IMG/VR virus record: IMGVR_UViG_3300032116_000004 | Span: 124,001 to 188,000 of that record | Length of the DNA: 64,000 nt | Reading direction: 5' to 3' (one strand) | Shown: piece after piece, positions 32,890-48,194 of the stretch | How the letters are laid out: every line of letters starts with the position of its first letter | Position numbering within the stretch: position 1 is the first letter of the stretch | The notes under the pieces: generated by a model | What the model was told of the DNA's origin: nothing | Seen by the model: the letters and a program-made list of their open reading frames with translations, nothing else | Databases searched by the model: none | Made by a program: the position numbers and the translations under genes

Positions 32890-35800
32890 ATGGACATCAA
32901 TGAATTAGACAGTTACCGCCTGTCGGACGCGGTAAAGTTTCACACTGAATTAAACCCTGCACTCTGGGACGGCGATCGCATGCGTCCCGAAGTGCGTGAG
33001 GCCCTGATCAAAATCGCCGATGATTTCCGCGAATTCCTGGGCATCAGTGATCTCGCAGTGGAAGATATCACTGTGAGTGGATCCAATGCCGCATACACCT
33101 ATACTCCCCATTCCGACATAGATCTGCATCTCTTAGTAGATTTCAGCAAGCTCAATCCCGACCAAGTATATCAAGAGCTGTTCAACGCAAAGAAATATCA
33201 ATACAACGATCAACACGATATAAAAATCAGAGGCTATGACGTCGAGCTCTATGTGCAAGACGCAGGCAAGCCTGTTCGCAGCCTTGGTGAGTATTCCATC
33301 GTGCGTGACGACTGGACTCGTATTCCCGTGCGACGCCAAGGCAATCTCGACGAAAAATCAACCCAAGCAAAATACGAAAAACTCAGAGACCTGATTGAGC
33401 TTGCACTGACCAGCGATGATCTCCAAACAGTCACCAATCTCACTGACGTGATAAAACGATATCGGCAGGCCGGATTGGATGAACATGGCGAGTTCGGACC
33501 TGAGAATCTGGCCTACAAGATCCTGCGCACACAGGGCTTGGTCAAGCGATTGTTTGATCATCGTGCCAGCCTAGAAGATTCAAAACTGAGCCTGGCTGAG
33601 CGCCGAAAGAAAAAGAAAAAATCCAAAAAGAAATTCCGTTACGGTTCTTTTGGTGGATACTATTATCCAGGCTATGGTTATTATGGTCAGACCGGCGACG
33701 CCGAAGCCGCAGACGGTGGTGGTGATGGGGGCGGAGAAAGTGTGCGCGAAGACACAGAGATCAAAGTCCAAGCCAAGAGCATACCCATAGACAAAGTGGT
33801 GCGACGCTTCGTGCATTTTGCCGCGCACTATCTCAAACTAGATCAACTGCCTCGCATCATCTTGCAAGGTGAAAAATTTACCAAGCACATCCATTCAATG
33901 GGCCATTATGTAGATGACAAGAAAATGATCGAGGTGGCCACGCACGGTCGCCACATCATGGACATCCTGCGCACCGTGGCACATGAACTCACACATTACA
34001 AACAGCATGAACGCTTGGGCCGAGACATGCCTGACACAGCGGGTCGCACTGGCAGTCCCTACGAAAATGAAGCCAATGCCAAGGCCGGCATAATTATGCG
34101 CCATTTCCAAAATCGTTATCCAGAATTCTTTGGCGCAGAAACAGTGGAAGAACAACTCACGGAGTTTTCACCCGCACAGTCTGGTGCTACCGGTGAAGAC
34201 GATGACATCGAAGCACACTATGGTGATCAGACTCCACCAGGACCAGAATTCCCTCCTACCATGCCCGCAGGCACTGTGAGGGTAGATGTGAGCGATGTGT
34301 ATGACTGGTATAAACTGGGACAGCATATCTCCAACATGAAAGGCTTGGGCAAGCATGACTTTGGTGCAGGTCCGCCCAGTTCCATAATCTCGTTTGGCGA
34401 TGAAGAAACTGAACATAAGTTTATCAAAGATCTTGAAGCCACGGGCCTAGATGTCACTGACATCGATCCCAAGGATCCCCGGCAACCCGCTGGCATGCGA
34501 AAAGTCAAGACCGATCCTACCTACAATGTAGACGAGGGTCTAGGAAAAACACTGGCCACTGGTGCCTTGGCAGCCGCTGCCGCACTGGGACAGCCAGCAC
34601 AGGCACAGGATGTGGGGCGCACGGCCTATCAGATAGGCAAGCAGATATATCAACCCTCGGGCATATTCACCCGTGCAGGTGCTGAAGAAGAACTCAAGGG
34701 CATAGCCCGAGACATGGCACGTGGCAGCAGAGAAATACGTGTGGGTGGCAAGTTGATCTATGGTGGCCCTAGACCGCAAGGTGAGCGTGTTGCGTCAAAC
34801 GCCGCGGCTGCATCAGCAGAAGAAGCCTATCGACAGGCCCTGGAAAATGCCATCAACCGCGCACAACAACAGCATGGTCCTATCACACTGGGCCCCGGCG
34901 GTTGGAAAGTTGTGGATTATGAAGCCGACCAGATGGGCAACACATTCCGTGCCATGGTGGCCATAGAAGGTCCTGCACCGCGCAGAGAATCCATACAGAC
35001 GCCTGTGAGTCGCAGCCAAAAGGATCGCGAAGATTACTACAAGTTTGTCATGGGCAAGGCCACGACAGGTCGTCCTTTGACACGCTCGGAACAAGAATTC
35101 ATCAAGACCTATCGTCTACAACAGAAAATACAAGGTAAAGTGGCCGAAGATGCCGCAGGATACATCCCCACCAAGAAGCAGGCCCGAGATCCACGTTTCA
35201 AAACAGCACTCACAGTGGACATCCGACCTGGACAGGTAGGCAAGGAAGCCAACAAGTTGGGATTGCAGACCGACAGCCAAGGACGTCCTGCACTGTTGAT
35301 CAAGAACTTGGCCAATGCCTTGAAGGAATACAAAGAGACTGGAGTGTTTGAAGCAGTCAATCCCGTGACTCCTGCCGTGCCAGACCCACGACAAAAAATA
35401 GATCCATATCAAGGGCAGGCCCAGAAACGACAAAGACCACAAGACCGACCAAAGAAAAAAACACCATCGAGCACTGGCAATCCAAGATTCGTCAATATCG
35501 AAGTCAAAGAAGACGAAGATCTCATGGAAGTCAAGATGTCGCCCGGGGCCTTGGAAGCCTGGGCACGATCACCTGAAGCCGAAGGTATACGTGCTGGCTT
35601 TGAAGCAGAAATGATCTTCCGTGATACCCGCCGTGACGAAGATGAAGACTACGATCAAGAACCTGACTACGACTACGATGAGCGGCCCGATGACATCGAC
35701 CATGTCATAGACTTCTTCTCCAATGATGACTATGGCTATGGTTTGAGTCGCCAAGGCGCCAGGAATCTACGAGAAAGCCTGTGGGAAGCCTATACGGAAT

Positions 35801-37989
35801 GGGTGGATGAACAGATCAGCGAGAGTTGGGACGAGAATGCCGAAGATCAAGTGCGTGACTACATGGAGACCAACGTCTGGGACGATGACTCAGAACGCGA
35901 AAGCCGTATCCAAGACAAGGTCGAGGAAATGTTTGGTGACGAGGCAGTGCCCGCTATAATGAAAGCCGGCGACAGCGCACCAAGATTCACCCGGAGTTCA
36001 GATCAAGATGAATATGCACAATCCAACGAATTATACCAAAAATTCAAGCAAGCATCCGATGCGGCCTACGAAGCATTCGAAGAAGAAATAACCAATGAGT
36101 TTGAAAGCCAAGGCGAATATTACGATGCGGCTCGCGAATATTATTGGGACATGACGCGAGAAGGCGGCGAGTTTGACGAGCGCGACTTCCTCCGTGACCG
36201 CTATGGTTACATGACTGACATCGCCAACGAAGAAAGCCTTGACTGGCCCTACTGGAGCGGCGGTTCCTCTGGCACTGGCAGCCGTGAGTGGAGCGATATT
36301 GGTGACAGTTTACAGCGTGCCATTGACATGCCAGTGAGAGTGAGTTCAGGCTATCACTCAACCACACGCCGGCCCGGTCTATGGATCATCGAACCCGACG
36401 GCAGCCTAGATCCCGATGATCGTGATGATGAAATGGGCCTGGAGATCGTGTCTCCGCCCTTGCCCTTGCCAGAAACCCTGGAAAAATTAAAACAGGTCAT
36501 TGAGTGGGGTAACTCAGAAGCCGATGCCTACACCAACTCGTCCACCGGCTTGCACATGGGCATCTCTATACCCTATGTGGGCGGTGACGTAGACTATGTC
36601 AAATTGGTGCTGTTCATGGGCGACGAATATGTGTTAGACAAGTTTGGTCGTGCTTCCAACACCTATGCGGCATCGGCCATGGAAAAACTACGCAACAGCA
36701 TGCGAGTGGCACGCCGCCGTGGCACCTTGACTGAAGCCCGATTTGATCCCATGGGTGCGCTAGAACTGGTGCAGAAAAATCTCATTGAACTGGCTGCTCG
36801 TTATGTGCAGAACGGTGTGGGAGACAGCAAGTATACTTCCGCACACATCCAGGACGGCTACATCGAGTTCCGTAGCCCTGGTGGTGATTATTTGAGCATG
36901 GAGAGTCGCGGTGAATATGATGACATCCGCAATACCATGTTGCGTTTTGCTCGGGCCATGCAGATCGCAGGCAGCCCCAGCCTGGAACGTCGAGAGTATG
37001 CCAAGAAACTCTATAAACTGATCTCACCTGGTGCACAGGATGACGGTCTCAAGTTATTTTCTCAATTTGCCGCTGGCACCATAACTCCAGAAGAACTCAA
37101 GAAACAGTGGGCCAATGCTGTGCTCCAGAAAGAGATACCCACCACTGGTCAAGAAGAGTGGGAAGTGTATGATCAGCGCAAGTCTGGTCCGGATGGAGTG
37201 ATCGACTCTTTCTATGCTGATGAATATGACACTGCCTATATGAAAGCCCAGGACAAGTATGGCAACACACCCGAATGGCGCAATTTGGACATCCGTAAGA
37301 AACAACCCTGGTATGATGTCAAGGATTCCTACGGTGACATCATACTCACTGTGAGAGCCAGAGATTTTGACAGCGCCAAACAAAAGGTCCAGGCAGAGTA
37401 TGGGGATCGACTCTCCGACGATTGGGAGATATATCGCAGGCCCGATGACACTCCTGAGCCAGAAAAGAAACTGAGTCCACGTGCTCAAGTGGCCAAACGC
37501 CTCAAAGAACCCAAGGTCACACCGGCAGTGGCCGCAGACAATGAGCGAGATCGTGAACAGATACAGGCCCGCATAGGTGAGCCTCAACCCGCAGGCGCAG
37601 TATCAGACGCCGGACACTATCGTGTGATGTGGGATGAGCGCAGGAATGGAACAGTAACCAGTGATTCTTTGAACATTGATGCTGCCAGTGCCGAAGCAGC
37701 CAGACAGAATGTGCTAGATGCGTTGCAAATGCAAGGTCGAGATGTCATACAGATATCTGCACACCCCCAACAGCCACCAGCCTGGCGGCGCAATCGAGAA
37801 CCTGTTGCCACATCAACACAGGGCGAATTCTCAGGACAGTGGCAAGTTCGTAATGCCAATACCGGAGAAGTGGTTTACACATTCAGTGGCATAGGCAACA
37901 GTCAAGGCGATGCCAATCGTGTGGCACAACAATGGGTCCAACGCACTAGATTTGATGATCCTGTAGAAGTCGTTCCAGAGTTGAGATAA
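32890..37989 (+). CDS. 1699-aa multidomain polyprotein: Pol-beta NTase, HExxH peptidase-like, signal-peptide module, amidoligase, others
   Basis: SGSNA..DIDLH..ELYVQD; AHELTH..ENEANA; GFEAEM/EPDGSL/LEIVSP/STGLH/IEFR. Confidence 0.8.
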   Translation: MDINELDSYRLSDAVKFHTELNPALWDGDRMRPEVREALIKIADDFREFLGISDLAVEDITVSGSNAAYTYTPHSDIDLHLLVDFSKLNPDQVYQELFNAKKYQYNDQHDIKIRGYDVELYVQDAGKPVRSLGEYSIVRDDWTRIPVRRQGNLDEKSTQAKYEKLRDLIELALTSDDLQTVTNLTDVIKRYRQAGLDEHGEFGPENLAYKILRTQGLVKRLFDHRASLEDSKLSLAERRKKKKKSKKKFRYGSFGGYYYPGYGYYGQTGDAEAADGGGDGGGESVREDTEIKVQAKSIPIDKVVRRFVHFAAHYLKLDQLPRIILQGEKFTKHIHSMGHYVDDKKMIEVATHGRHIMDILRTVAHELTHYKQHERLGRDMPDTAGRTGSPYENEANAKAGIIMRHFQNRYPEFFGAETVEEQLTEFSPAQSGATGEDDDIEAHYGDQTPPGPEFPPTMPAGTVRVDVSDVYDWYKLGQHISNMKGLGKHDFGAGPPSSIISFGDEETEHKFIKDLEATGLDVTDIDPKDPRQPAGMRKVKTDPTYNVDEGLGKTLATGALAAAAALGQPAQAQDVGRTAYQIGKQIYQPSGIFTRAGAEEELKGIARDMARGSREIRVGGKLIYGGPRPQGERVASNAAAASAEEAYRQALENAINRAQQQHGPITLGPGGWKVVDYEADQMGNTFRAMVAIEGPAPRRESIQTPVSRSQKDREDYYKFVMGKATTGRPLTRSEQEFIKTYRLQQKIQGKVAEDAAGYIPTKKQARDPRFKTALTVDIRPGQVGKEANKLGLQTDSQGRPALLIKNLANALKEYKETGVFEAVNPVTPAVPDPRQKIDPYQGQAQKRQRPQDRPKKKTPSSTGNPRFVNIEVKEDEDLMEVKMSPGALEAWARSPEAEGIRAGFEAEMIFRDTRRDEDEDYDQEPDYDYDERPDDIDHVIDFFSNDDYGYGLSRQGARNLRESLWEAYTEWVDEQISESWDENAEDQVRDYMETNVWDDDSERESRIQDKVEEMFGDEAVPAIMKAGDSAPRFTRSSDQDEYAQSNELYQKFKQASDAAYEAFEEEITNEFESQGEYYDAAREYYWDMTREGGEFDERDFLRDRYGYMTDIANEESLDWPYWSGGSSGTGSREWSDIGDSLQRAIDMPVRVSSGYHSTTRRPGLWIIEPDGSLDPDDRDDEMGLEIVSPPLPLPETLEKLKQVIEWGNSEADAYTNSSTGLHMGISIPYVGGDVDYVKLVLFMGDEYVLDKFGRASNTYAASAMEKLRNSMRVARRRGTLTEARFDPMGALELVQKNLIELAARYVQNGVGDSKYTSAHIQDGYIEFRSPGGDYLSMESRGEYDDIRNTMLRFARAMQIAGSPSLERREYAKKLYKLISPGAQDDGLKLFSQFAAGTITPEELKKQWANAVLQKEIPTTGQEEWEVYDQRKSGPDGVIDSFYADEYDTAYMKAQDKYGNTPEWRNLDIRKKQPWYDVKDSYGDIILTVRARDFDSAKQKVQAEYGDRLSDDWEIYRRPDDTPEPEKKLSPRAQVAKRLKEPKVTPAVAADNERDREQIQARIGEPQPAGAVSDAGHYRVMWDERRNGTVTSDSLNIDAASAEAARQNVLDALQMQGRDVIQISAHPQQPPAWRRNREPVATSTQGEFSGQWQVRNANTGEVVYTFSGIGNSQGDANRVAQQWVQRTRFDDPVEVVPELR

Positions 37990-38573
37990 TGCGATCTCAG
38001 GAATTTATCTCAGAAGTAAACTTTCCCGATGAGTTATCAGTGAGCGACCGCATACAAAACTATTTTTTTGATCGCGGCTATCAGTTGGCCGGCGAAGGAC
38101 GCGATCAGATAGCCTTGTTGAGTCCCAGAAACACCATACTCAAAGTCTTGGGCATAGGTGAAGATGAGCGCGAACAGATAGTAAAAAACTACGTGAAATT
38201 TTTCGTCAACAATCAGAACGATCCTTATATTCCCAGGATTTACAACGTGGGTGATTTTGAAGTAGATGGAGAAACATATTTTGTGTATGAGATGGAATAT
38301 CTAGACTATGTGGCCAACGAAGAAGCCACGCTGGACTATCTAGAAAATCTCATGTCAGCAGTGGCACGCGGACGTGATCGTGTGCAGGAGTTCATGAAGA
38401 ACAATCCTGCTCCTAAAGAACTGGATCGTGATGACATCGTGGGTTTAGTAAATACTACGCTGAAATTAGAACAAGCCTTGGGCGGCCAGGCACCATTGGA
38501 TCTCAGCCAGATAGAGAACCTTCGCCGCCGCAGTGATGGACATCTAGTGATAATGGACCCCTACAGCCTATGA
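37989..38573 (+). CDS. Protein-kinase-like protein with MRxxEF leader
   Basis: AGEGRD, ILKV, IPRIY, MEYL, DLSQIEN, VIMDP. Confidence 0.55.
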   Translation: MRSQEFISEVNFPDELSVSDRIQNYFFDRGYQLAGEGRDQIALLSPRNTILKVLGIGEDEREQIVKNYVKFFVNNQNDPYIPRIYNVGDFEVDGETYFVYEMEYLDYVANEEATLDYLENLMSAVARGRDRVQEFMKNNPAPKELDRDDIVGLVNTTLKLEQALGGQAPLDLSQIENLRRRSDGHLVIMDPYSL

Positions 38574-38968
38574 GAGCACAAGAATTATTAGTCGAAATCA
38601 CTCGCAGAGACTTCTTGCGTGGTGCAGGTGCCGTGGCTGGCTCTGCGGCATTGGGATCGGCACAGGCTCAATCCGATCGGAACATCACCAAGATTATCAA
38701 CTCGGCTGCCATGTTGTGGGTGATATGTAAAAAACACTATCCCAACAACCCCAACACCCGAGAACTAGAAGAAACAGTCAAACGGCTTTGGAAAAGTAAA
38801 AGCGACAATGCTGTGGCATTTAATGAAGAATACACAGCAATGAAAGAAAGATTGGCAGATTGGGAAGCCCGAGATCCTGCCGGCTATGCCAACTTTGTCA
38901 ACCGATATATGATGAACTTTGCCAAGATTAAAGCCAACTTGGAAACATTACCAGAGATGATGATATGA
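38570..38968 (+). CDS. Leader + twin-arginine signal protein
   Basis: MRAQELLVE then ITRRDFLRGAGAVAGSAALGSAQA. Confidence 0.75.
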   Translation: MRAQELLVEITRRDFLRGAGAVAGSAALGSAQAQSDRNITKIINSAAMLWVICKKHYPNNPNTRELEETVKRLWKSKSDNAVAFNEEYTAMKERLADWEARDPAGYANFVNRYMMNFAKIKANLETLPEMMI

Positions 38969-40809
38969 GAGCACAAGAATTCGCTAATTCCAAACTAGTC
39001 ATCTTTGACATCGACGATACCCTGGTCAACACAGACACCAAGGTCAATGTGGTGCGAGATGGCCGGATCGTGAAGCAACTCAACAGTCACGATTTCACGC
39101 ACTATCACTTACAGCCCGGTGAAGAGTTTGACTTTGGTGCTTTCCGTGATGCCCGCGAATTCTACACACAGGCCCGGCCCATACCCGGCATGATCCGCCA
39201 ACTCAAACAAGACATCGCCACGGGCAACAAAGTGATCATGCTTACTGCCCGCTCGGACTTCAATGACCGAGAAGTTTTCCTGGACACATTCCGCCAGTAT
39301 GGCATTGACATGTCAAAAGTGCATGTGTATCGTGCTGGTAACTTGAACATCAAAGCCGCCACAGAAGAAAAGAAAAAGATCATACTACAACATCTCTTGG
39401 GCAAAGAACACTACGACAAGATCATCATGTATGATGATTCTGTGCCCAATTTAAATGCTTTTCTTAGCCTCAAACAAGATTATCCATGGTCTAAGTTCTA
39501 TGCCTGGCACGTGGATCCATCAGGAAAGGCAGACGAGTATCATAGGACTGATATCCGTGTCACAGAAGTCAGTGCGGATCGCTTGCAACAGTATCTAAAT
39601 CGCGCTGGACAACAGGTTGATCGCAGACAGGAAAGAATGGCCCAGGCCCGTGAGCGACTCAACAAGAGTTATGAAATATACCATGCAGACCGTCCTGCTG
39701 GCTCCAGCCAGATTGTAGATCGTTTTGAATCTGACACCCCTGCGGAAGCCCAACGTTATTATGAAAAGTTTATTCAGAACTACGAAAGTGATCGAGACTT
39801 TGATTTACAACTGCGTCGAAGCACAGGCATCGTGGAAGATTCATTCCGAGGCATCGATATCTCCATGGAAAAGGAAGATGATGAAATCATGGTCCAGGCG
39901 TCGGCGGGTGGCAAGCAGTTAGGGTCAGTGTTGTTTGTGGAATACGATGGCTATCTCATGCCACAGGATCTTGAAGTAGATGAACGATTCCGTGGGCAAG
40001 GTATCGCCCAGGCCATGTATGACTATGTGAAAAGCCTGGGTTATCGCATACGCAGGAGTGGCCAGCAGACCGACGCAGGTTCTGGATTCTGGAGAAAACA
40101 TCGTCCAGAACAGAATGTCTGGGAACAAAGTGTGGCGAAAGGCGATAAAATGAGCCTCATTAATCTAGATCAATCCTTGGCCGACACACCATCGGTATGG
40201 AAAAAATTCATAAGTTTGTTGCCACCACAATTGGCCCGAGAGTTTGTGGATGAGCGTCCAAGACCCGATCAAGACGATATAGACTTTCTCACTCCTTTGC
40301 GTCTGGTCAGTCCGCAGCCTGTATCAGTGCGTGTGGCCGACTTATTGCGTCATCCAGAGAATCAAGGAACCATTGGTAGATCGCCCGACGATGTGGTAAC
40401 AGCAGTAAACCAACGATGGGGTCTCAAGATCCCGTCAGGTAAGAAATATGATCCCAATCCCGCACGATATCGTGCCTATGCCCAGATGGCACCCGGCACA
40501 GCCAGTCCTTCAGTCATGGCCGACGGGGTGATCCTGTTTGGAGCAGGCAGATTCGTGGCCGCGGCTCTGCGTGGTGATGAAACCATGCGTGTGTGGAGCA
40601 TGACAAGAAAGCAAGGCGTGAAGGAAGTAGAGGAAAACTTTGCTGATGGTCGAGTAAAGGGCAAGAGCCGCCCGGGTCGTGTGAAACGTGCGGGTGCTAG
40701 TTGTAGTGGATCAGTCACAGATCTGCGTGCCCGTGCCAAGAAGTATGGTGGAGAACGGGGCAAAATGTATCATTGGTGCGCCAACATGAAGTCAGGTCGG
40801 AAGAAATAA
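38965..40809 (+). CDS. Polyprotein: HAD phosphatase + GNAT + ParB-like + basic Cys module
   Basis: FDIDDTL/LTARS/YDD; VDERFRGQGIA..QTDAG; ILFGAGR; NFADG..HWCAN. Confidence 0.75.
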   Translation: MRAQEFANSKLVIFDIDDTLVNTDTKVNVVRDGRIVKQLNSHDFTHYHLQPGEEFDFGAFRDAREFYTQARPIPGMIRQLKQDIATGNKVIMLTARSDFNDREVFLDTFRQYGIDMSKVHVYRAGNLNIKAATEEKKKIILQHLLGKEHYDKIIMYDDSVPNLNAFLSLKQDYPWSKFYAWHVDPSGKADEYHRTDIRVTEVSADRLQQYLNRAGQQVDRRQERMAQARERLNKSYEIYHADRPAGSSQIVDRFESDTPAEAQRYYEKFIQNYESDRDFDLQLRRSTGIVEDSFRGIDISMEKEDDEIMVQASAGGKQLGSVLFVEYDGYLMPQDLEVDERFRGQGIAQAMYDYVKSLGYRIRRSGQQTDAGSGFWRKHRPEQNVWEQSVAKGDKMSLINLDQSLADTPSVWKKFISLLPPQLAREFVDERPRPDQDDIDFLTPLRLVSPQPVSVRVADLLRHPENQGTIGRSPDDVVTAVNQRWGLKIPSGKKYDPNPARYRAYAQMAPGTASPSVMADGVILFGAGRFVAAALRGDETMRVWSMTRKQGVKEVEENFADGRVKGKSRPGRVKRAGASCSGSVTDLRARAKKYGGERGKMYHWCANMKSGRKK

Positions 40810-40817
40810 GTAATATC

Positions 40818-41000
40818 ATGCGAGCAAGAGAACTCACAGGACACAAGTGGATCACCACTATAACCATAAGCAATCCTGACTATACCGGCCGGATTGATGT
40901 GTCAGTGTATGCCCACAATCAAGCACAGGCCCGACAACTGCTCAAAGCGCAGTATCGCATCCAGGATCATCACATCGGATCCATCAGGAAGGCGCCATGA
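40818..41000 (+). CDS. Small protein with MRAREL leader
   Basis: Leader motif; ATGA overlap with next gene. Confidence 0.65.
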   Translation: MRARELTGHKWITTITISNPDYTGRIDVSVYAHNQAQARQLLKAQYRIQDHHIGSIRKAP

Positions 41001-41314: not shown

Positions 41315-41901
41315 TGAGAGCACAGGAGTTCCAGGAAGTGGCACTGCTGACCCGGGTCAAAGGCAAGGGCGAGGAGCCCAGCAATCTGCCCAAGTTTGGA
41401 CGGCCCATACTGCCCAAAGAAGAGATCAAATACCTTGGGAAAAAAGTCGGCAACATGGGCCGCTATGAGATCTGGCGAGACTATGTGGGTAGCCAGGTCA
41501 GTTACATCCTGGTAGATCCCCAAAGCCGCAGAGCCATAATCCATGCCTTTGGCAGCAGATATCAGAGAAATCCCAACTCATTCATAGTGGCAGGCCTGTA
41601 TGCCGCACCCGGCAATCCTGTGCGTGCCAGCCAGTTCTATCATGCCTTGATCACGGAATTAGGACTGGATCTCATTTCTGATATCAAGCAGAGTCCCGGA
41701 GGCTACAAAGTGTGGCGTGAATTACAGCAAAGATTTCGTGACGTGAATGTATATGGCTATGATACCAAGCGCAACGAACTGCTGAACGTCACTGCACGTG
41801 ATGAAGAAATGACACATGTGCCCGCTGAAATCGTGCGCAAGGGCGGGCCCGATGTCAAAGACGTGGCCCGCAACATCAGGCTAGTGGCCACAGCAAAGTG
41901 A
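41314..41901 (+). CDS. GNAT-like protein with leader
   Basis: MRAQEFQE; ASQFYHAL...LISDIKQSPGGYKVWREL. Confidence 0.5.
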   Translation: MRAQEFQEVALLTRVKGKGEEPSNLPKFGRPILPKEEIKYLGKKVGNMGRYEIWRDYVGSQVSYILVDPQSRRAIIHAFGSRYQRNPNSFIVAGLYAAPGNPVRASQFYHALITELGLDLISDIKQSPGGYKVWRELQQRFRDVNVYGYDTKRNELLNVTARDEEMTHVPAEIVRKGGPDVKDVARNIRLVATAK

Positions 41902-41934: not shown

Positions 41935-42225
41935 ATGAAATCAACATTCGTAAAATTAAACGTAGATCTACACTGCGATTGGAAAAAGACTCCGCCGCCC
42001 TATAGACTCTATGTCAACGATGAACTGTTCACTGAACGCACCTACATCTGGGGTGGCACACAGTATCTCCAAGAAATCATCAGCCTCAGCGCACCGCCTG
42101 GACGCTACAGCCTACGTATCGACAATCTGGGCGATCCTGACTGCAAATTCAAACTGCGCAATCTCTCAGTAGAAACAGGATCAGCCACGGTGCTGGATTC
42201 TAAAACCGTGGAGATCACCCAATGA
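41935..42225 (+). CDS. Hypothetical protein
   Basis: TAAATA 4 nt upstream. Confidence 0.7.
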   Translation: MKSTFVKLNVDLHCDWKKTPPPYRLYVNDELFTERTYIWGGTQYLQEIISLSAPPGRYSLRIDNLGDPDCKFKLRNLSVETGSATVLDSKTVEITQ

Positions 42226-42404
42226 GAGCCCGAGAATTCGTCACAGAAACCACGGTCAGCGGTGCCATAGCCACGGTTGCACAGCCCATGATGGCCGTGC
42301 TCGCAAGAGAACCTGCACAAGCACCCGCTGATAAATATAAAACTACTTCTAGGAAGCCGGCACCAGATGTTAACCGACGATTTAAAAACTCTTTTAGCAA
42401 GTAA
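42222..42404 (+). CDS. Small protein with MRAREFVTE leader
   Basis: Leader motif; ATGA coupling. Confidence 0.65.
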   Translation: MRAREFVTETTVSGAIATVAQPMMAVLAREPAQAPADKYKTTSRKPAPDVNRRFKNSFSK

Positions 42405-42807
42405 CTTTGCATATTATCTCAAGGCACAGATGTTCCATTGGAACGTGGAAGGCCCTGATTTCGGGCAACTGCACGAATTTTTCGGCGAAGTCTACGCTGA
42501 TGCCTACGGCGCTGTGGACCAGATAGCCGAATACATCCGCACCCTGGATGACTACGCTCCCGGAAGCCTAGAGCGTTTTTCAGAACTCAGCGAGATCCCT
42601 GGACAGACCAAGATTCCCCGAGCCCGGCTCATGCTGGAAGAATTGCTACAAGATACCGAAACCATGAAAGCCATGGTCATGCGTGTGTTTGAATCTGCAC
42701 AGGCCGAAGGTCGCGAAGACATCGCTAACTTCATGGCCGAACGCCAAAACAGTCATGGCAAGTATGCCTGGCAGACACGCTCATTCCTCAAGGATCAACG
42801 AGCATGA
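42367..42807 (+). CDS. dps: Dps-family mini-ferritin
   Basis: HWNVEGPDFGQLHEFFGEVY...DQIAEYIR...HGKYAW. Confidence 0.9.
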   Translation: MLTDDLKTLLASNFAYYLKAQMFHWNVEGPDFGQLHEFFGEVYADAYGAVDQIAEYIRTLDDYAPGSLERFSELSEIPGQTKIPRARLMLEELLQDTETMKAMVMRVFESAQAEGREDIANFMAERQNSHGKYAWQTRSFLKDQRA

Positions 42808-43739
42808 GCAATGACATAGCCCGCATACTGACCAAGTTTGATCAACTCAACGAAGGGTTGAACCAACAACAGACTGCCGTGAAGCAGATGCCTGCACTGT
42901 TTAAAATGAAATCACAGGGTCCTGTGTTGGGCGGAGATCCCAACCGCCCTGCGCCCAGCAAAGGTTACTATTTTGGTGGTGAGGGCGAGGAACCCACTGT
43001 GAATCGCGGTGGTTACAATAAACTACGAGATCGCACAGATTATCTTGACAAGCGTGATATCTTGTTCCGCCAGCTCACTCCTGGCATAGATCCACAAACC
43101 AGAGAAGCCATCAAAGATCGATTGGCCCAATTAGAAAAAGCTGCCGAGATGTCTGGGCTGACAGAAAACACCGAAGACAATCCCATGAGAGATGCAGTGC
43201 TTGGGCGCATCCGTCGTGGCAGATTGGATCTCATAGAAAAATATGGTCTGGACCATGTGCTGTCCGCTGTGGATGATGTCACAGACGGTGATGATGATTG
43301 GTACGAAATTGGATCCAGTGATGTCAGCGCCTATATCAAGCGTGTGGAAGATCTCTTGCGTGATCACTATGGTAGCCGTGACGAAGTAGTTGAAAGCGCC
43401 ACTACCGAAGACGTGATCTCCACTGTTAAGAAAAAACTGGGCGACTATCTACAAGACATAGCCACGCAGATCAAGACAGATCCTGATCTCAAAGACAAAA
43501 TGCCCCAGGACATGGATCGGATCTCTCCTGTGGTCAAGACCATCACCACAGACGATGGCAAAGAAATCAAGATACACGGCAACGAAGATGACGGATTCCG
43601 CATCACTATAAAGAACAAGGCCTTGTCATCCGAATTTGACAATCTTGACGAAGCTGTGATGGCCTGCGAGATGTATTGTGCTCGCCGACGCAACATGCAA
43701 GAACAAACGTCAAACAACGACTATCTGGAAGAACGATAA
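42804..43739 (+). CDS. Modular hypothetical protein with xxE junctions
   Basis: QLNE, GLTE, VVE junctions. Confidence 0.7.
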   Translation: MSNDIARILTKFDQLNEGLNQQQTAVKQMPALFKMKSQGPVLGGDPNRPAPSKGYYFGGEGEEPTVNRGGYNKLRDRTDYLDKRDILFRQLTPGIDPQTREAIKDRLAQLEKAAEMSGLTENTEDNPMRDAVLGRIRRGRLDLIEKYGLDHVLSAVDDVTDGDDDWYEIGSSDVSAYIKRVEDLLRDHYGSRDEVVESATTEDVISTVKKKLGDYLQDIATQIKTDPDLKDKMPQDMDRISPVVKTITTDDGKEIKIHGNEDDGFRITIKNKALSSEFDNLDEAVMACEMYCARRRNMQEQTSNNDYLEER

Positions 43740-46399
43740 TGAATCTGTTTAATCTAATTGAAAATACCACAGGCGGCTACGACAATCTCCGCGCACTGTT
43801 ACAGGCCGTGAGCACCCGCTCGCCAGCCGATCTCAACATAGGTGGTGAACCCATCACCCTGGACTACATGGAAGCTAACTTCCTCAACGGTATCTATCGA
43901 GCATATTTGAAAGCCGGACGCCAAGAAGAATTCATCCAGGACCTGGGCGATGCACGGCGCTTTGACATGCACATGAAGAAACTGCGCGATCTCATCGCTA
44001 AACAGAAATCCTTCCGTGGATCAGTTCCGGGTCAACGTGGTGTCACAGGCGATGTTCCTGCTGGTGTGATGGAAGGTCTGGAAGCCTTGGAAGAGATAGC
44101 CATGCAGGATCCCAACAATCCCACAGATCAAAATGCCGGCAAATTGAACTGGACTCGCATGATCCAGGACTACATGGGCAACAAACCCTACACTGAATTT
44201 GAATTTGGCACGGATCGTCCGCTCACTCTGTATCGCACACAGATCTATGCCATACTCAAAGCATTTGGCAACATGAAACCACAGCAGAAACTCAACATCA
44301 TCCTCAACACCTTTGGCAACAAAGTGGCTACCGTGGAATACCTTGACAAACTGCGTGCCAAGGGCATGATGCCCAAAAAAGTGCCTGCCTATGTGGCGCC
44401 TGGCACAGAGGCTCCTGCACCGGGACAGATGAGCCTTCCGGGCATAGACATGCCTCGCATCAAAGAAGCTCAAAAAAAAAGTCCGCAAGAATTAGCTAGA
44501 GACACGGCTGTTTCGGCCAAGGTCCAACGTGCGTTCCAACTGGCCAGGGCTCGTCAACCTGCCGCTGCCTCTGACATCGAAGCCTTTGTCAAAGATGAAA
44601 TAGAACGTGGCGAAGAACTAGCACAACAGGTCGGTCAGTTACAGCAAGACAATGAACAACAGAGCCAGCAGATAGCACAACTGACCAAGGCCGTGAGCCA
44701 GCAAGCCAAGGCCGAACCTGAACCAAAGCCACCTGCACCATCAGCACCTGCCGCACGGGCACCCACGGCACCTGCCAAACCAGAAAAAGAACCCACTGCC
44801 AAAGCAGAGCCCGAGGCCCTGCCCAAGGACAAAGAAGAACCCAAGACCGAACCCAAGGCCGAACCTGCACCGCAGACACAACCGGCTCCAGCCAAGGCTC
44901 GCAAGCCCAGGGCTAAACCTCGTGCCAAACCACAAAAGGCCCCCGGGGAATTGCCGCCCGTGGATACCACCATCCAGATGCCACCACAGCAGATACCCGA
45001 TCAGCGACCTTCAGCGCAGATATTGCAGTTTCCTGGCGGCAAGAAAGATGAAGTAGGCGCTGCCATGCAAGGCCTGGATCTTGGTGATTTGCCACGTGCC
45101 GCGGGACAAAACGAAAGCGTGAGAGTCACTGTGAGAGGCAATCCGTTGTTTGAAGGCAAGGATGGCACTGTGAAACAACGCATCGCCGATGACTTCTTCC
45201 TGGTAGATGTAGATGGATTTGGATCACATGCTTTCCATGTCAGCAAATTGGTGTTTGAGATGCAAACCCGACTGGATCGCTTCAATATTGACAGACCCAT
45301 GTTGCCATCCGGCGTGGCCAAGGTCCAATACGCCCGTGACAACAACATGTATGATGATGCCCGCATACAAGAAGCCTTGCCTGACAAGGCCATGGCTGTG
45401 TTGAAAAATCTACAGCAACAGCAACAACAACCAGAACCTGCAATTGATCTCAATACACCTGCTGGTCCACGACGTGGTCGTCCTACCAATGCCCAACGAG
45501 CACAGCGCCACGAAGAGTTCTTGACTCTCCGACGTCGCATAGCATTGTTGGACGAGTTGATCCAGATGAAAGAACAGATTGATCGCTTGTTCCTCAAGGC
45601 ACAGAATGTGCGTGGCGGTATCTATCCTGGCTTGCAAGCAGACATTGAGATGGAAGAACTGTATCCTGTGCCAGAAACAGATCGCCAATTCCAAGATCTC
45701 CGAGACAAATACACCAAAGACTTAACCGCACTGCAAAAGTTCTTGGCCATGAAGAAGGCAGTGTATCGTGAAGACGAAGATTCGATGTTGGGCGAAAGCA
45801 CTGCCTTGGTGCGCTTGAAACAAGCACGTCAGGCACTGAGTCAACAAGGTGTGGCGGAAGGCACCGACGACGTCAAAAAGCGAATGTCCAAGTTGGAAGC
45901 ACTGGCCTTGGCTGCAAATCGTGCCGGTGATGATGCAAAATGCAAAATGTATCAGCAAAAGATTCAATCACTCAAACAAAAATTATCTAGAGATATGTCA
46001 ACAGGTGTAGCGGAAGCAGTTACAGATGTAAAGGCTGGCATGGCTGAAATATATCATCGCCTGGCTCCCAAAATAGAACGCCACCGAGACAGTTTCCTTG
46101 CCGGGCAACTGTATGATGAGTTGGAAAACTATGCTGAACTACACGGTGCCGAAGGCGAGTTCAAAAGGATGATGGCCACGGCCAGGAACAGTGCCCACAT
46201 GGAATATGATACCAACCCGGGTGGTTTCCAAAACTGGTTCTGGTTCTTGCCATTTGAAAAACAGTTGGATGAAAAACAAGATGCTTGTTACCGCAAGGTA
46301 AAAAGTCGTTACAAAGTATGGCCTTCGGCTTATGCATCGGGTGCCTTGGTCCAGTGCCGCAAGAAAGGTGCTGACAACTGGGGCAACAAGAAAAAATGA
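43739..46399 (+). CDS. Large modular polyprotein with Pro/Lys/Glu linker and GVAE junctions
   Basis: MNLFNLIE leader; QGVAEG, TGVAEA, QLDE; C-terminal ACYRKVKSRYKVWPSAYASG module. Confidence 0.75.
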   Translation: MNLFNLIENTTGGYDNLRALLQAVSTRSPADLNIGGEPITLDYMEANFLNGIYRAYLKAGRQEEFIQDLGDARRFDMHMKKLRDLIAKQKSFRGSVPGQRGVTGDVPAGVMEGLEALEEIAMQDPNNPTDQNAGKLNWTRMIQDYMGNKPYTEFEFGTDRPLTLYRTQIYAILKAFGNMKPQQKLNIILNTFGNKVATVEYLDKLRAKGMMPKKVPAYVAPGTEAPAPGQMSLPGIDMPRIKEAQKKSPQELARDTAVSAKVQRAFQLARARQPAAASDIEAFVKDEIERGEELAQQVGQLQQDNEQQSQQIAQLTKAVSQQAKAEPEPKPPAPSAPAARAPTAPAKPEKEPTAKAEPEALPKDKEEPKTEPKAEPAPQTQPAPAKARKPRAKPRAKPQKAPGELPPVDTTIQMPPQQIPDQRPSAQILQFPGGKKDEVGAAMQGLDLGDLPRAAGQNESVRVTVRGNPLFEGKDGTVKQRIADDFFLVDVDGFGSHAFHVSKLVFEMQTRLDRFNIDRPMLPSGVAKVQYARDNNMYDDARIQEALPDKAMAVLKNLQQQQQQPEPAIDLNTPAGPRRGRPTNAQRAQRHEEFLTLRRRIALLDELIQMKEQIDRLFLKAQNVRGGIYPGLQADIEMEELYPVPETDRQFQDLRDKYTKDLTALQKFLAMKKAVYREDEDSMLGESTALVRLKQARQALSQQGVAEGTDDVKKRMSKLEALALAANRAGDDAKCKMYQQKIQSLKQKLSRDMSTGVAEAVTDVKAGMAEIYHRLAPKIERHRDSFLAGQLYDELENYAELHGAEGEFKRMMATARNSAHMEYDTNPGGFQNWFWFLPFEKQLDEKQDACYRKVKSRYKVWPSAYASGALVQCRKKGADNWGNKKK

Positions 46400-46929
46400 G
46401 ATATCGAGAGATCCTTGAAGCATGCTGGACTGGTTATAGAAAAGCCGGTATGAAGCGCAAGGGTGATCGCTGGGTTCCCAACTGTGTGCCTGTGAGCGAA
46501 CAGCACATGGAAGAAAATCTCCGAGACTGGTTCAAAGAGAAGTGGGTGCGATTTGGGCCCGACGGTAAGATCCGTGGTGACTGCGCCAGAGGTTCCGACT
46601 CAGAAGGCAAGCCAAAGTGCCTGCCACAGTCAAAAGCACACAGCCTAGGCAAAAAAGGTCGTGCGTCGGCAGCAGCCAAGAAGCGTAGAGAAGATCCCAA
46701 TCCAGAACGCAGAGGTGCTGCCAAGAATGTGTCCACAAAGGTTCGCGAGGATGCAGTGCAAGATCTAGTGAAAGATCTAAAAAATCCACACAGTTATGAT
46801 GCCATTGATCACATGATGCAGACCATTGCTAAAAAATCTGGAATCACTGCAAAAGAACTGCATGATCGTTTCGTGAAAAAACATGACATAACTCCAGACG
46901 AATACATCAAACGCAAAGGCAACAAATGA
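46396..46929 (+). CDS. Leader + basic Cys modules
   Basis: MRYREILE; ACWTGY..VPNCVP; MEE-NLRDWFKEKW..KPKCLP; VRE. Confidence 0.7.
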   Translation: MRYREILEACWTGYRKAGMKRKGDRWVPNCVPVSEQHMEENLRDWFKEKWVRFGPDGKIRGDCARGSDSEGKPKCLPQSKAHSLGKKGRASAAAKKRREDPNPERRGAAKNVSTKVREDAVQDLVKDLKNPHSYDAIDHMMQTIAKKSGITAKELHDRFVKKHDITPDEYIKRKGNK

Positions 46930-47333
46930 GAAATCTAATCAACCGCATGGAAGCCATAGAACAAGGTTGTCCCCCTGCAACACAAAACATTGACCTCAAC
47001 CTCAAGAACAGGAAGAAAGCCATAGATGAATATGACTATGGTCCCATGGATCCCAACGCTCCCAACGAAGAATATTGGGAAAGGATAGCCGCAGAGTGGA
47101 ACATGGACGACGTCGATCAAGCCAAGTCGGCACGCTGTGGCAACTGCGCGGCCTTTGACATATCAGATGACATGCAAGATTGCATAGCCAAAGGCATCGG
47201 TGCAGAACCTGGGTCGGACCCTATGAGCACCATAGATGCAGGCACCTTGGGTTATTGCAAATTCCTCAAATTCAAATGTGCTGCCAAACGCACCTGCACC
47301 GCTTGGGTGGAAGGTGGTCCCATAACAAAATGA
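46926..47333 (+). CDS. Cys-rich hypothetical protein with leader
   Basis: MRNLINRMEAIE; CGNC, YC, C....TC. Confidence 0.7.
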   Translation: MRNLINRMEAIEQGCPPATQNIDLNLKNRKKAIDEYDYGPMDPNAPNEEYWERIAAEWNMDDVDQAKSARCGNCAAFDISDDMQDCIAKGIGAEPGSDPMSTIDAGTLGYCKFLKFKCAAKRTCTAWVEGGPITK

Positions 47334-47677
47334 GAGTGACTGACATCGTGCGCGAGACCAAAGATATTGCCAGTTTCCTAAGTGGTCAATCTCCCATGGT
47401 AACGCTGCCACCTGGTAGTGCTAGAGCCAAGATTTTCACACCACAGGATCGCCAGGCCATAGAACGTTTTGTTCCTGCGGTGCGCGACATGACCGATCAT
47501 GACGCACTGGAATCGGCCAAAGAGTTTTTAGAAACTTTCTTGAATCGCATCAAAACCGGCGAACAGTTGGACAGGACTGACCTTCGCATAGTCGGCGGAC
47601 TCTATGACATCATCCGCAAACAAACCGATCGTTATGACACGTTTATGAGGAAATACAATCTAGATGAAAGCCAGTGA
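47330..47677 (+). CDS. Hypothetical protein with MRVTDIVRE leader
   Basis: ATGA coupling; leader. Confidence 0.7.
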   Translation: MRVTDIVRETKDIASFLSGQSPMVTLPPGSARAKIFTPQDRQAIERFVPAVRDMTDHDALESAKEFLETFLNRIKTGEQLDRTDLRIVGGLYDIIRKQTDRYDTFMRKYNLDESQ

Positions 47678-48194
47678 ATTCGTTTCTGAGAAATGGAGCC
47701 GCAAATACAAACGCTCTATCAACTGTGCCCGGCCTCGTGGTTTCAGCCAGAAAGCGCACTGTGCTGGTCGTCGAAAGACCGACGAAGCCATAGGTGCCAA
47801 TTACAACACCGCTCGTAGCATCGCTCAGGACATCCATGATTATGTTCTGAACATAGGACAGACCATTAGTCTGCAAGGGTCTCGAGGTCGTCCATATGTA
47901 GAGCAACTGCAATCAGAAATGTTGCCCATGATCGAGGAACTGCGTGCGCTTGGCTACGACTATCACCCCGAAGCCCGAGACTACATGGTGCCATTGACCA
48001 TAGACAATGCTCTCGATCCCAGACTGACCGAAGAACAACTGGATGAGATACTCATGTTTAAAGGATCACCTTGCACCGTGGACTGCTCGGGTCACAGGGC
48101 AGGATACGAGTGGTGGTTCCGCAAACGCAAGACTCCCAACTCATGGAGCCCCAGTTTCAACAAGGGCGCTGCCTTGGCAGCCGCAGGTAAGTAA
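47664..48194 (+). CDS. Three-module protein with MKASEFVSE leader
   Basis: KWSRKYKRSINC..HC / KTDE / QLDE-ILMFKGSPCTVDCSGH. Confidence 0.7.
   Translation: MKASEFVSEKWSRKYKRSINCARPRGFSQKAHCAGRRKTDEAIGANYNTARSIAQDIHDYVLNIGQTISLQGSRGRPYVEQLQSEMLPMIEELRALGYDYHPEARDYMVPLTIDNALDPRLTEEQLDEILMFKGSPCTVDCSGHRAGYEWWFRKRKTPNSWSPSFNKGAALAAAGK

What the first reader, a model, noticed from the sequence alone, without database searches (positions are those of the whole stretch)
32890..48194. Island of unrelated genes sharing a capsid-targeting-like N-terminal leader
Seen: about 13 genes in this block with otherwise unrelated sequences start with a similar leader: MRSQEFISE (37989), MRAQELLVE (38570), MRAQEFANS (38965), MRARELTGH (40818), MRVAEFIAE (40997), MRAQEFQE (41314), MRAREFVTE (42222), MNLFNLIE (43739), MRYREILE (46396), MRNLINRMEAIE (46926), MRVTDIVRE (47330), MKASEFVSE (47664), more loosely 32890 and 42804. 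The DNA is also conserved (atgagagcacaagaatt identical at 38570 and 38965). Known: T4 internal proteins carry a ~10-aa capsid targeting sequence (IPIII MKTYQEFIAE) removed by prohead protease gp21 after Glu, and are injected with the DNA. Inference: a much expanded, interchangeable set of packaged and injected proteins, here including enzymes, with the leader acting as packaging tag and possibly as recombination handle.
Basis: partly seen in the sequence, partly recalled or inferred. Interest (0 to 1): 0.9.

Follow-up and report, generated by a model that had tools for sequence, protein, structure and literature searches.

The report
Shared capsid-targeting-like leader on phage genes
An uncultured giant relative of phage T4 has a block of about a dozen unrelated genes that all start with the same nine-residue tag; the tag closely resembles the one T4 uses to load proteins into its head and inject them, so it may mark a large, swappable set of injected proteins.

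Summary
Ten + strand genes between 37989 and 48194 start with M-R/K-x-x-E/D-F/I/L, usually followed by a hydrophobic residue, any residue, then Glu. Two more genes carry a looser variant. Only one weak match occurs among about 70 other ORFs in the window (Fisher 6e-7), and none in about 75 kb of flanks from the same genome. The tag is conserved as peptide, with synonymous codons varying, and it is disordered in a confident AlphaFold model.

The window belongs to an abundant uncultured freshwater jumbo phage of the T4 superfamily. At least 317 distinct tagged ORFs occur in related metagenomic contigs. A matrix built from them ranks T4 IPIII and IPII first among 1,184 Met-peptides in 50 kb of T4. 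T4's Phe, Ile and Glu positions, which are needed for targeting and processing, are conserved.

Cargos include a kinase-fold protein, a phosphatase-acetyltransferase fusion and short basic Cys modules. The adjacent 1699-aa protein fuses modules that are separately tagged genes elsewhere. Cassettes differ between strains.

Best reading: a T4-type capsid-targeting propeptide, which makes this a new variant of a known kind. Packaging, cleavage and a gp21-type protease in this genome remain unshown.

The parts
32890..37989 (+). 1699-aa multidomain ('polyvalent'-like) protein: N-terminal nucleotidyltransferase-like domain, an HExxH metallopeptidase-like segment, and an amidoligase. It has no canonical leader (N-terminus M-D-I-N-E-L).
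   Evidence: Pfam Amidoligase_2 7.9e-7 and phrog_36119 2.9e-42. Segments aa 297-421, 429-551 and 871-1404 occur as stand-alone leader-tagged ORFs in related contigs.
37989..38573 (+). Leader (MRSQEFISE) plus a 185-aa protein-kinase-like domain.
   Evidence: All 120 listed homologs but one (apparently truncated) start with a leader of this kind (208 found). AF2 pLDDT 83 with residues 1-15 disordered. Foldseek finds 160 PDB hits at E<=1e-3, with kinases and aminoglycoside phosphotransferases filling the top 50. K52, E62, D171, N177 and D190 are invariant. Weak phrog_15752 kinase hit.
38570..38968 (+). Leader (MRAQELLVE) directly followed by a twin-arginine (Tat) signal-like segment; 132 aa.
   Evidence: Pfam TAT_signal 1.1e-6 at residues 9-29.
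38965..40809 (+). Leader (MRAQEFANS, no Glu at position 9) plus a HAD/PNK-type phosphatase, a GNAT acetyltransferase and a basic Cys C-terminal module; 614 aa mosaic.
   Evidence: Pfam and PHROG hits. The HAD part and the last 60 aa each exist as separate leader-tagged ORFs elsewhere.
40818..41000 (+). Leader (MRARELTGH), 60-aa basic protein.
40997..41314 (+). Leader (MRVAEFIAE), 105-aa basic protein.
41314..41901 (+). Leader (MRAQEFQE), 195-aa basic protein. A different leader gene replaces it in relative L005.
41935..42225 (+). Leaderless conserved 96-aa backbone gene of the island.
   Evidence: Conserved position and N-terminus in relatives.
42222..42404 (+). Leader (MRAREFVTE) plus a conserved small basic protein (60 aa). 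Its 3' end overlaps the Dps gene by 38 nt.
   Evidence: Family alignment across 15 relatives.
42367..42807 (+). Leaderless Dps/ferritin-like DNA-binding protein, a backbone gene.
   Evidence: Pfam Ferritin 6.6e-19, phrog_3636 4.9e-28.
42804..43739 (+). 311-aa acidic backbone protein with no canonical leader. Relatives start MS.DIRSILE.
43739..46399 (+). 886-aa protein with a variant leader (MNLFNLIE), a low-complexity middle and a C-terminal basic Cys/Trp module.
   Evidence: Positional homologs start M-x-L-x-D/N-L/F-x-x-E. The C-terminal module is shared with many tagged proteins and with T4-like cyanophage proteins.
46396..46929 (+). Leader (MRYREILE) plus basic Cys modules; 177 aa.
   Evidence: phrog_727 6.4e-20. 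The modules occur in a cyanophage protein encoded between gp16 and gp17.
46926..47333 (+). Variant leader (MRNLINRMEAIE) plus a Cys-rich 135-aa protein.
   Evidence: Conserved N-terminus in relatives; 7 Cys.
47330..47677 (+). Leader (MRVTDIVRE), 115 aa. Replaced in relative L005.
47664..48194 (+). Leader (MKASEFVSE) directly followed by a basic KWS.KYK / GFSQ.AHC module; 176 aa.
48260..48646 (.). Strain-variable junction at the 3' edge of the island.
   Evidence: In L001 (91-93% nt identity) this stretch is replaced by 1.6 kb that holds another leader-tagged gene.

Best explanation
The nine-residue leader (consensus M-R-A-x-E-F-I/L/V-x-E) is a capsid-targeting propeptide of the T4 kind. It would bind the scaffolding core while the prohead is built, so that any protein carrying it is enclosed. 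A gp21-type prohead protease would then cut after the Glu of the hydrophobic-x-Glu motif. The mature protein would stay with the DNA in the head, helped in many cases by short basic Cys/Trp modules, and leave with the DNA at infection. The island is then a hyperplastic locus of internal or ejected proteins, such as a kinase-fold enzyme, a phosphatase-acetyltransferase and small basic proteins. The neighbouring 1699-aa protein is a fused version of such cargo modules. Shown here: the tag, its confinement to the island, selection at the peptide level, its match to the T4 sequence, the T4-superfamily context, and cargo diversity and exchange. Inferred: packaging, cleavage, ejection and what the cargos do in the host.
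For: (1) Ten strict leaders cluster in 10 kb, against one weak match elsewhere in the window and none in about 75 kb of flanks. (2) Across 317 distinct tagged ORFs from related contigs, residues the search pattern did not fix are strongly biased: Ala3 62%, I/L/V7 72%, Glu9 58%. A hydrophobic-x-Glu motif ends at position 8 or 9 in 226 of 317. That matches the L/I-x-E specificity of gp21 (PMC9026906). (3) T4 IPII and IPIII, read from NC_000866, share the core Q-E-F-I-A-E with leaders 37989 and 40997. A core matrix from the environmental leaders ranks IPIII and IPII 1st and 2nd of 1,184 Met-peptides in 50 kb of T4; gp24, whose N-terminus is annotated as gp21-cleaved, ranks 4th and IPI 5th. The T4 residues mapped as needed for targeting (7) and processing (8, 10) correspond to the conserved F6, I7 and E9 here. 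(4) The phage has a T4 gp43-type polymerase, a clamp loader and a gp9/10-like baseplate domain. Its cultured relative Atu_ph07 has a gp21 homolog. Peptidase_S77 genes are very common in freshwater jumbo-phage contigs. (5) Codons vary synonymously at every conserved position. The leader is disordered in a pLDDT-83 model. (6) The tag sits on at least 21 cargo families. Modules occur either tagged on their own or fused. Fused modules keep a hydrophobic-x-Glu just before the conserved module start. (7) Basic Cys modules are enriched on tagged proteins, 18% against 2%, and occur in T4-like cyanophage proteins encoded inside the structural gene cluster. (8) Cassettes differ between strains of about 92% identity, as at the T-even internal-protein loci (PMC3012670).
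Against: There is no direct evidence of packaging, cleavage or ejection. No prohead protease, portal or capsid gene was found in the window or in about 75 kb of flanks. No contig could be shown to carry both leader genes and a gp21-type protease. Proteins encoded next to the protease in related contigs do not carry this leader, apart from a roughly 75-aa gp67-position protein with a looser N-terminus. The closest cultured relatives, Atu_ph07 and Phosso, have no tagged genes at the syntenic place. The T4 Tyr4 position, important for targeting, is not conserved, and the leader is one residue shorter. About 29% of tagged ORFs lack Glu at position 8 or 9, including 38965 and 40818. Arg2 is AGA in 72% of cases against a 12% background, so part of the signal reflects ATGA start/stop overlaps and A-rich 5' codons.
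Confidence: 0.6

Rival explanations
1. The leader is an N-terminal address or control tag of another kind. It could be a degron for the phage's own AAA+ (Lon/Clp-like) protease encoded at 26413-28695, or a signal for some other location or timing in the infected cell. In that case the proteins are ordinary early or middle effectors made after infection, not virion cargo.
For: A conserved, disordered N-terminal peptide on unrelated proteins fits any linear-motif tag. An ATP-dependent protease gene lies 10 kb upstream. One tagged protein continues into a Tat signal, where the leader could simply be the n-region. No head genes lie nearby.
Against: Atu_ph07 and Phosso keep the same AAA+ protease but have no tagged genes in the syntenic interval. 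The specific match to the T4 capsid-targeting core and to the gp21 cleavage motif would then be coincidence. The enrichment of basic DNA-binding-type modules, and their occurrence in cyanophage structural clusters, fits head proteins better.
Confidence: 0.17
2. The conserved start is a nucleic-acid feature: a translation-initiation or coupling element, or a short homology patch that promotes cassette exchange. The peptide would be a by-product.
For: Starts overlap the previous stop codon (ATGA). AGA, GCA, CAA, GAA and TTT are over-used in the leader. 17 nt are identical between two leaders. Homology between relatives ends 6-16 nt inside the leader.
Against: 21 other coupled starts in the window lack the motif. 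Synonymous codons vary at every conserved residue, for example AGA/CGA, GCA/GCT/GCC and TTT/TTC. Glu at codon 9 and the hydrophobic residue at codon 7 are conserved although their codons differ. Leader-end relics persist at internal fusion junctions, where no initiation occurs.
Confidence: 0.06
3. The tag does load the proteins into the prohead, but they are not delivered effectors. They would serve as scaffold-core or DNA-condensing components inside a very large capsid, and are either degraded or retained.
For: Most tagged cargos are basic (pI 9-10.6) and many carry short basic Cys modules. T4 IPIII also contributes to head morphogenesis (PMC9026906). A small conserved tagged protein (42222) and Dps belong to the conserved backbone.
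Against: A kinase-fold protein with all catalytic residues invariant, a phosphatase-acetyltransferase, and the nucleotidyltransferase, peptidase and amidoligase modules are not expected for purely structural fillers. Rapid cassette turnover between strains fits host-conflict functions better.
Confidence: 0.12

Closest known systems
Phage T4 internal proteins IPI, IPII, IPIII and their capsid targeting sequence (CTS)
   Same: A short N-terminal leader is the only feature shared by otherwise unrelated proteins. The core E-F-I-x-E ends in the gp21-type hydrophobic-x-Glu site. The genes sit in a variable region, and the phage belongs to the T4 superfamily.
   Different: The leader has 9 residues rather than 10, with Arg-Ala in place of Lys-Thr-Tyr. 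There are 10-12 tagged genes in one array instead of three genes at two loci. Cargos reach 886 aa and include enzyme folds. No cargo resembles a T4 IP. The lineage is a distant jumbo phage (polymerase under 50% identical to any cultured phage). Nothing has been shown experimentally.
Polyvalent proteins of phages and conjugative elements (Iyer et al. 2017, PMC5512222)
   Same: The 1699-aa protein joins several conflict-type domains (nucleotidyltransferase, zincin-like HExxH, amidoligase) in one chain. Such proteins are thought to enter the host with the DNA.
   Different: Here the same modules also exist as single genes that each carry the leader. The gene is not next to portal or MuF-type head genes.
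Ejection / inner-body proteins of phiKZ-like giant phages (phiKZ, 201phi2-1, SPN3US)
   Same: Many different proteins are packaged in a large head and processed by a diverged gp21-type protease after Glu (PMC9026906).
   Different: Those propeptides are long and varied, and are cut at S/A-x-E. No shared decapeptide tag is known, and they belong to a different phage lineage.
T4 Alt ADP-ribosyltransferase and gp24
   Same: These are head proteins with short N-terminal pieces removed by gp21. The gp24 N-terminus scores 4th with the leader matrix.
   Different: They are single conserved genes, not a family of exchangeable cassettes.

Membership tests
T4-type CTS-tagged internal head proteins | An N-terminal leader of about 10 residues resembling the T4 CTS, including the residues mapped as needed for targeting (T4 positions 4, 7) and processing (8, 10) | tested here: met
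   The F, I and E equivalents are conserved (F6 68%, I/L/V7 72%, E9 58% of 317). T4 IPIII and IPII rank 1-2 with the leader matrix. The Tyr4 equivalent is not conserved (Ala 62%). Mapping from PMC9026906.
T4-type CTS-tagged internal head proteins | The leader ends in the gp21 cleavage motif L/I-x-E | tested here: met
   A hydrophobic-x-Glu motif ends at position 8 or 9 in 226 of 317 tagged ORFs and in 8 of the 10 strict window leaders. 38965 and 40818 lack it.
T4-type CTS-tagged internal head proteins | The same genome encodes a gp21 (Peptidase_S77) prohead protease and a T4-type scaffold core | tested here: inconclusive
   T4-type polymerase, clamp loader and baseplate domain are present. Atu_ph07 has a gp21 homolog, and the protease is abundant in freshwater contigs. 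None was found in about 140 kb of this genome, and no contig is shared between the leader and protease lists.
T4-type CTS-tagged internal head proteins | Cargos are unrelated to one another and the locus varies between related phages | tested here: met
   No pairwise BLASTP hits beyond residue 15. At least 21 cargo families. Cassette replacements in L001 and L005.
T4-type CTS-tagged internal head proteins | The proteins are present in the virion in processed form and are ejected with the DNA | not testable with these tools
   The phage is uncultured, and no proteome exists in the collections searched. No cultured phage carries a homolog of the kinase-like cargo.
Polyvalent proteins | Two or more conflict-related effector domains in one polypeptide | tested here: met
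   Amidoligase_2 is above its Pfam cut-off. The nucleotidyltransferase-like domain hits phrog_36119 at 2.9e-42. The HExxH segment is homologous to stand-alone proteins.
Polyvalent proteins | Linkage to head-morphogenesis or packaging genes, or to a known virion-targeting domain (e.g. MuF) | tested here: not met
   No MuF, portal or terminase gene is adjacent. The linkage here is to the leader-tagged array instead.
Tat-exported proteins (38570 only) | A twin-arginine motif followed by a hydrophobic stretch and an A-x-A site near the N-terminus | tested here: met
   Pfam TAT_signal 28.8 bits (cut-off 22.7) at residues 9-29, directly after the leader. Export itself was not tested.

The most novel reading that the evidence does not exclude
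The leader is a clade-wide 'address label' that marks hundreds of different proteins for loading into the capsid and delivery into the host. That would make the injected effector repertoire of an abundant group of uncultured freshwater jumbo phages readable from sequence alone. The repertoire would include a delivered protein kinase, modules that can be shipped singly or fused and then released by the head protease at retained internal sites, and a cargo whose Tat signal would send it on to the periplasm after delivery.
Probability: 0.4. Interest if true: 0.8.

Novelty: new variant of a known kind. Interest (0 to 1): 0.6.

Why it matters
Which phage proteins travel with the DNA into the cell is hard to learn without purified virions, and impossible for uncultured phages. 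If this leader works like the T4 capsid targeting sequence, a nine-residue pattern would list the delivered proteins of a very common group of freshwater giant phages. At least 317 distinct tagged ORFs were seen in under 2 Mb of sampled contigs. These proteins are first-minute effectors and are prime candidates for anti-defence and host-takeover functions. It would also show that the T4 loading mechanism is old and portable across the T4 superfamily, that cargo genes are exchanged as cassettes, and that large multidomain proteins can arise by fusing such cassettes. The tag could be tried as a tool for loading foreign proteins into large capsids.

Tried and rejected
1. Finding the prohead protease in the same genome. 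I walked about 10 kb upstream and about 65 kb downstream of the window on identical contigs and found only metabolic, transporter and small genes.
2. Fetching gp21 homologs from IMG/VR with Atu_ph07 gp204, with an alignment and with a DNA pattern. More than 600 exist, but none of the contigs returned is also in the leader or polymerase lists. An HMM of the protease against all leader loci gave one hit, in an unrelated chance locus. An exact look-up of one protease gave a 5.5-kb contig only.
3. Synteny in cultured relatives. The Clp-protease-to-polymerase interval of Atu_ph07 and Phosso has no tagged genes, so the Atu_ph07 virion proteome cannot be transferred.
4. Programmed frameshift joining the 60-aa leader ORF (42222) to Dps. 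Rejected: the small ORF is a conserved protein through its whole length, including the overlap.
5. T4 late promoter TATAAATA. One match, equal to chance. Sigma-70 promoter and terminator scans were at background.
6. Leader-like sites inside the giant protein. The best score, 12.3 at aa 735, is within the shuffle range, so it is only suggestive.
7. PDB sequence search with the kinase-like family gave nothing significant; only the fold search was informative.
8. A megablast of the island and a tblastn of the kinase-like cargo against cultured phages gave no match.
9. The gene after the polymerase (51657) matches a loose pattern in relatives but is a conserved core gene without the Glu. I treated it as a false positive.
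Full report
WHAT THE WINDOW IS
The window is almost entirely + strand coding. It holds a T4 gp43-type DNA polymerase at 49000-51660. The best cultured matches are Sinorhizobium phage Phosso at 48%, Agrobacterium phage Atu_ph07 at 43% and the 121Q/Rak2-like coliphages at 42%. It also holds a T4-type clamp loader, a Lon/Clp-like AAA+ protease, radical SAM enzymes and sugar-nucleotide genes, plus a T4 gp9/10-type baseplate domain. Megablast finds nothing among cultured phages. Proteins identical to the window's first and last sampled proteins are encoded on long freshwater metagenome contigs, for example ENA ERZ27248034 k141_538207 (267.8 kb) and JGI Ga0114841_1000149 (209.5 kb). More than 600 IMG/VR contigs encode a polymerase relative; the 80 listed are at least 79% identical. 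So this is an abundant, uncultured jumbo phage of the T4 superfamily.

THE OBSERVATION
The pattern M[RK]..[ED][FLIV] occurs 15 times in six frames. Ten of these lie between 37989 and 47664, and each opens an ORF of 60-614 aa. In a greedy ORF set, 8 of 14 island ORFs match against 1 of 70 outside (Fisher 5.8e-7).

The genes are packed with ATGA-type start/stop overlaps. However, 21 equally coupled starts outside the island include only one weak match, whereas 6 of 9 inside match. About 75 kb of flanks from the same genome hold no proper leader. 43739 and 46926 carry looser variants that are conserved within their own families. 32890 and 42804 do not carry the leader. Once the first 15 residues are removed, no two island proteins hit each other. 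The 17 identical nucleotides at 38570 and 38965 are real.

SPREAD OF THE LEADER
In the 80 polymerase-linked loci, 104 of 105 first-ATG matches lie on the polymerase strand, mostly in the 10 kb upstream of the polymerase. The exception to that placement is a conserved core gene just downstream of the polymerase, which accounts for 26 of the matches and was treated as a false positive.

A conserved backbone is visible. It runs: a roughly 98-aa protein, a small tagged protein, Dps, an acidic protein, a large protein with a variant leader, a small regulator, then the polymerase. Differing tagged genes sit in between.

Of 96 in-frame matches, 73 start an ORF, and their neighbours carry other versions of the leader, up to nine per locus. 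Many of the contigs are 200-345 kb long.

Pooling everything gives 317 distinct tagged ORFs. Positions not fixed by the search pattern are strongly biased: Ala3 62%, I/L/V7 72% and Glu9 58%. A hydrophobic-x-Glu motif ends at position 8 or 9 in 226 of 317.

PEPTIDE OR NUCLEIC ACID?
Codons vary synonymously at every conserved residue. A/T-rich codons are favoured, however, and Arg2 is AGA in 72% of cases against a 12% background. This fits the ATGA overlaps and ordinary 5' codon bias. The leader is therefore selected mainly as a peptide. In a confident AlphaFold model of the 37989 family (pLDDT 83), residues 1-15 are disordered. Even so, M1, R2 and E9 are invariant or nearly invariant in the 55-sequence alignment of the family, and all listed homologs but one apparently truncated sequence start with such a leader.

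COMPARISON WITH T4
I read the T4 internal-protein genes from the record NC_000866 rather than from memory. IPII and IPIII share the core Q-E-F-I-A-E with leaders 37989 (Q-E-F-I-S-E) and 40997 (A-E-F-I-A-E). T4 has one extra residue before the core.

A matrix of leader positions 4-9, built only from the environmental ORFs, was run over all 1,184 Met-peptides in 50 kb of T4. IPIII and IPII ranked 1st and 2nd at 16.6 bits, with the next site at 10.8. gp24, whose N-terminus is annotated as cleaved by gp21, ranked 4th and IPI 5th. A chance site of 15.7 bits in control phage DNA shows the score alone is not overwhelming. What counts is that the two top sites are true starts of the two known CTS genes.

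A T4 head review (PMC9026906) states four relevant points:
- gp21 cuts after Glu in L/I-x-E.
- The first ten residues of IPIII suffice for packaging.
- Targeting depends mainly on residues 4 and 7, and processing on residues 8 and 10.
- The CTS may be a general way for T4-like phages to load varied proteins.
Residues 7, 8 and 10 correspond to the conserved F6, I7 and E9 here. Tyr4 has no counterpart. An earlier review (PMC3012670) describes T-even internal proteins as a diverse defence set sharing only the CTS.

THE CARGOS
- 37989 has a minimal protein-kinase-like fold. Foldseek finds 160 PDB hits at E<=1e-3, with kinases and aminoglycoside phosphotransferases filling the top 50; TM-scores are modest at 0.35-0.46. 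The Lys, Glu, Asp-x4-Asn and Asp positions are invariant. There is also a weak PHROG kinase hit.
- 38570 runs from the leader straight into a Tat signal.
- 38965 joins a HAD/PNK-type phosphatase, a GNAT acetyltransferase and a 60-aa basic Cys module.
- 46396, 47664 and the C-terminus of 43739 carry short basic Cys/Trp modules. These modules also occur in T4-like cyanophage proteins encoded between gp16 and gp17. They are found on 18% of tagged ORFs against 2% of other ORFs.
- Most tagged cargos are basic.

THE GIANT GENE AND FUSIONS
The 1699-aa protein at 32890 has a nucleotidyltransferase-like domain, an HExxH segment and an amidoligase. Its segments recur in other contigs as separate ORFs, each with the leader. 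It therefore belongs to the same system as a fused form, like the polyvalent proteins thought to be injected with phage DNA (PMC5512222, PMC7824862).

38965 is likewise a mosaic. Its HAD part and its last 60 residues exist as stand-alone tagged genes. In the fusion, the terminal module is still preceded by V-E-E, where the stand-alone genes have the end of the leader. This fits a retained cleavage site but is not proof. Leader-like internal sites at module junctions do not exceed shuffles.

EXCHANGE BETWEEN STRAINS
L001 is 91-93% identical in DNA. It replaces window 48260-48646 with 1.6 kb that holds another tagged gene. L005 replaces 41330-41922 and 47336-48021 with other tagged genes, and the left junctions lie 6-16 nt inside the leader codons.

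WHAT IS MISSING
I could not show a gp21-type protease in this genome:
- None lies in the window or in the flanks I walked.
- Atu_ph07 gp204 is a gp21 homolog (32% identity, 5e-18).
- Relatives with Pfam Peptidase_S77 next to a T4 portal are very common in freshwater contigs.
- No contig appears in both the protease lists and the leader or polymerase lists.
- Proteins encoded beside those proteases lack this leader. The exception is a roughly 75-aa protein at the gp67 position, with the looser start M-K/R-L-x-E-L/M-F.
- Atu_ph07 and Phosso have no tagged genes at the syntenic place.
- No cultured phage has a homolog of the kinase-like cargo, so no virion proteome can be borrowed.

VERDICT
The best explanation is a T4-type capsid-targeting propeptide that marks a large, exchangeable set of internal or ejected proteins (confidence about 0.6).

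The main rival is another kind of N-terminal tag on proteins made after infection (about 0.17). Next is head loading without delivery (about 0.12). A purely nucleic-acid role is unlikely (about 0.06).

The principle is known from T-even phages. New here are the lineage, the shorter leader, the scale (10-12 genes per genome and hundreds of cargos in the clade), the enzyme cargos, and the single-or-fused module organisation. I found no earlier description of this leader in the paper library searched. I rate it a new variant of a known kind, with interest about 0.6.

Noticed in passing
window 42222-42404 and 42367-42807: The small tagged ORF ends 38 nt inside the Dps gene, in another frame. The same 38-nt overlap recurs in several relatives. 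A frameshift fusion was considered, but the small ORF is conserved as a protein through the overlap, so the two appear to be separate genes.
   Followed up: yes
window 38570-38968; also 32890 protein aa ~553-580: Leader 38570 runs directly into a Tat signal. A similar Ala-rich hydrophobic stretch ending A-Q-A-Q lies inside the 1699-aa protein, right after a V-D-E. If the leader and internal sites are cut, export signals would be exposed on delivered fragments.
   Followed up: no
window 38965-40809 (aa 425 and 547-556); 32890-37989 (aa 735): Leader-like sequences sit at internal junctions of fused modules: A-R-E-F-V-D-E in 38965, V-E-E before the terminal basic module, and S-E-Q-E-F-I-K in 32890. 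These may be relics of former gene starts or retained protease sites. The scores do not exceed shuffles.
   Followed up: partly
window 48260-48646 vs L001:3680-5307; window 45843-45860 vs L001:827-1269: A strain with 91-93% nt identity carries a 1.6-kb replacement holding another tagged gene. It also has a 442-nt length difference inside the low-complexity Ala/Pro/Lys/Glu-rich middle of gene 43739.
   Followed up: partly
window 51657-52601: The conserved gene after the polymerase starts M-K-L-S-E/D-L in many relatives and so matches a loose leader pattern. It has no Glu at position 8-9 and is a core gene, so it is a false positive to exclude from leader counts.
   Followed up: yes
L210:3281, L211, L213, L287-L332 (about 1.2 kb upstream of the protease): In Atu_ph07 and in freshwater contigs, the roughly 75-aa gene after the portal (the place of T4 gp67) starts M-K/R-L-x-E-L/M-F. 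In two Atu_ph07 relatives (L211, L213) the gene after the protease starts M-R-A-x-E-L-Y-E. Prohead core proteins of this lineage may carry related N-termini.
   Followed up: partly
window 62016-62852, 22076-23209, 59336-61986; L336/L338 downstream: The window encodes GTP cyclohydrolase I and radical SAM enzymes, with a PTPS/QueD-like gene on the downstream loci. It also holds a long sugar-nucleotide, aminotransferase and methyltransferase cluster. These suggest 7-deazaguanine-type DNA modification and/or glycan synthesis by the phage.
   Followed up: no
L339-L341 (same genome, 30-65 kb downstream of the window's end): The phage genome carries TctA/TctB/TctC and DctP transporter components, a phosphate-binding-like protein, a porin, AhpC and a CMD-family gene. 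This is an unusual set of host-like uptake and stress genes.
   Followed up: no
window ~2400-6050 (from gene calls on L083): Small eIF-1a/S1-like ORFs, an Fe/Mn superoxide dismutase (5139-5717) and an Fe-S assembly protein (5721-6044) lie just before the baseplate-like genes at 6094-14256.
   Followed up: no
L344 (Synechococcus phage S-SM2 gene SSM2_108): A T4-like cyanophage protein encoded between gp16 and gp17 starts with a T4-CTS-like N-terminus (M-K-T-L-K-Q-F-L-K-E). It ends in the same basic GFSQ.AHC module found on the window's 47664 protein, and that module is preceded by an internal E-E-F-R-E.
   Followed up: partly
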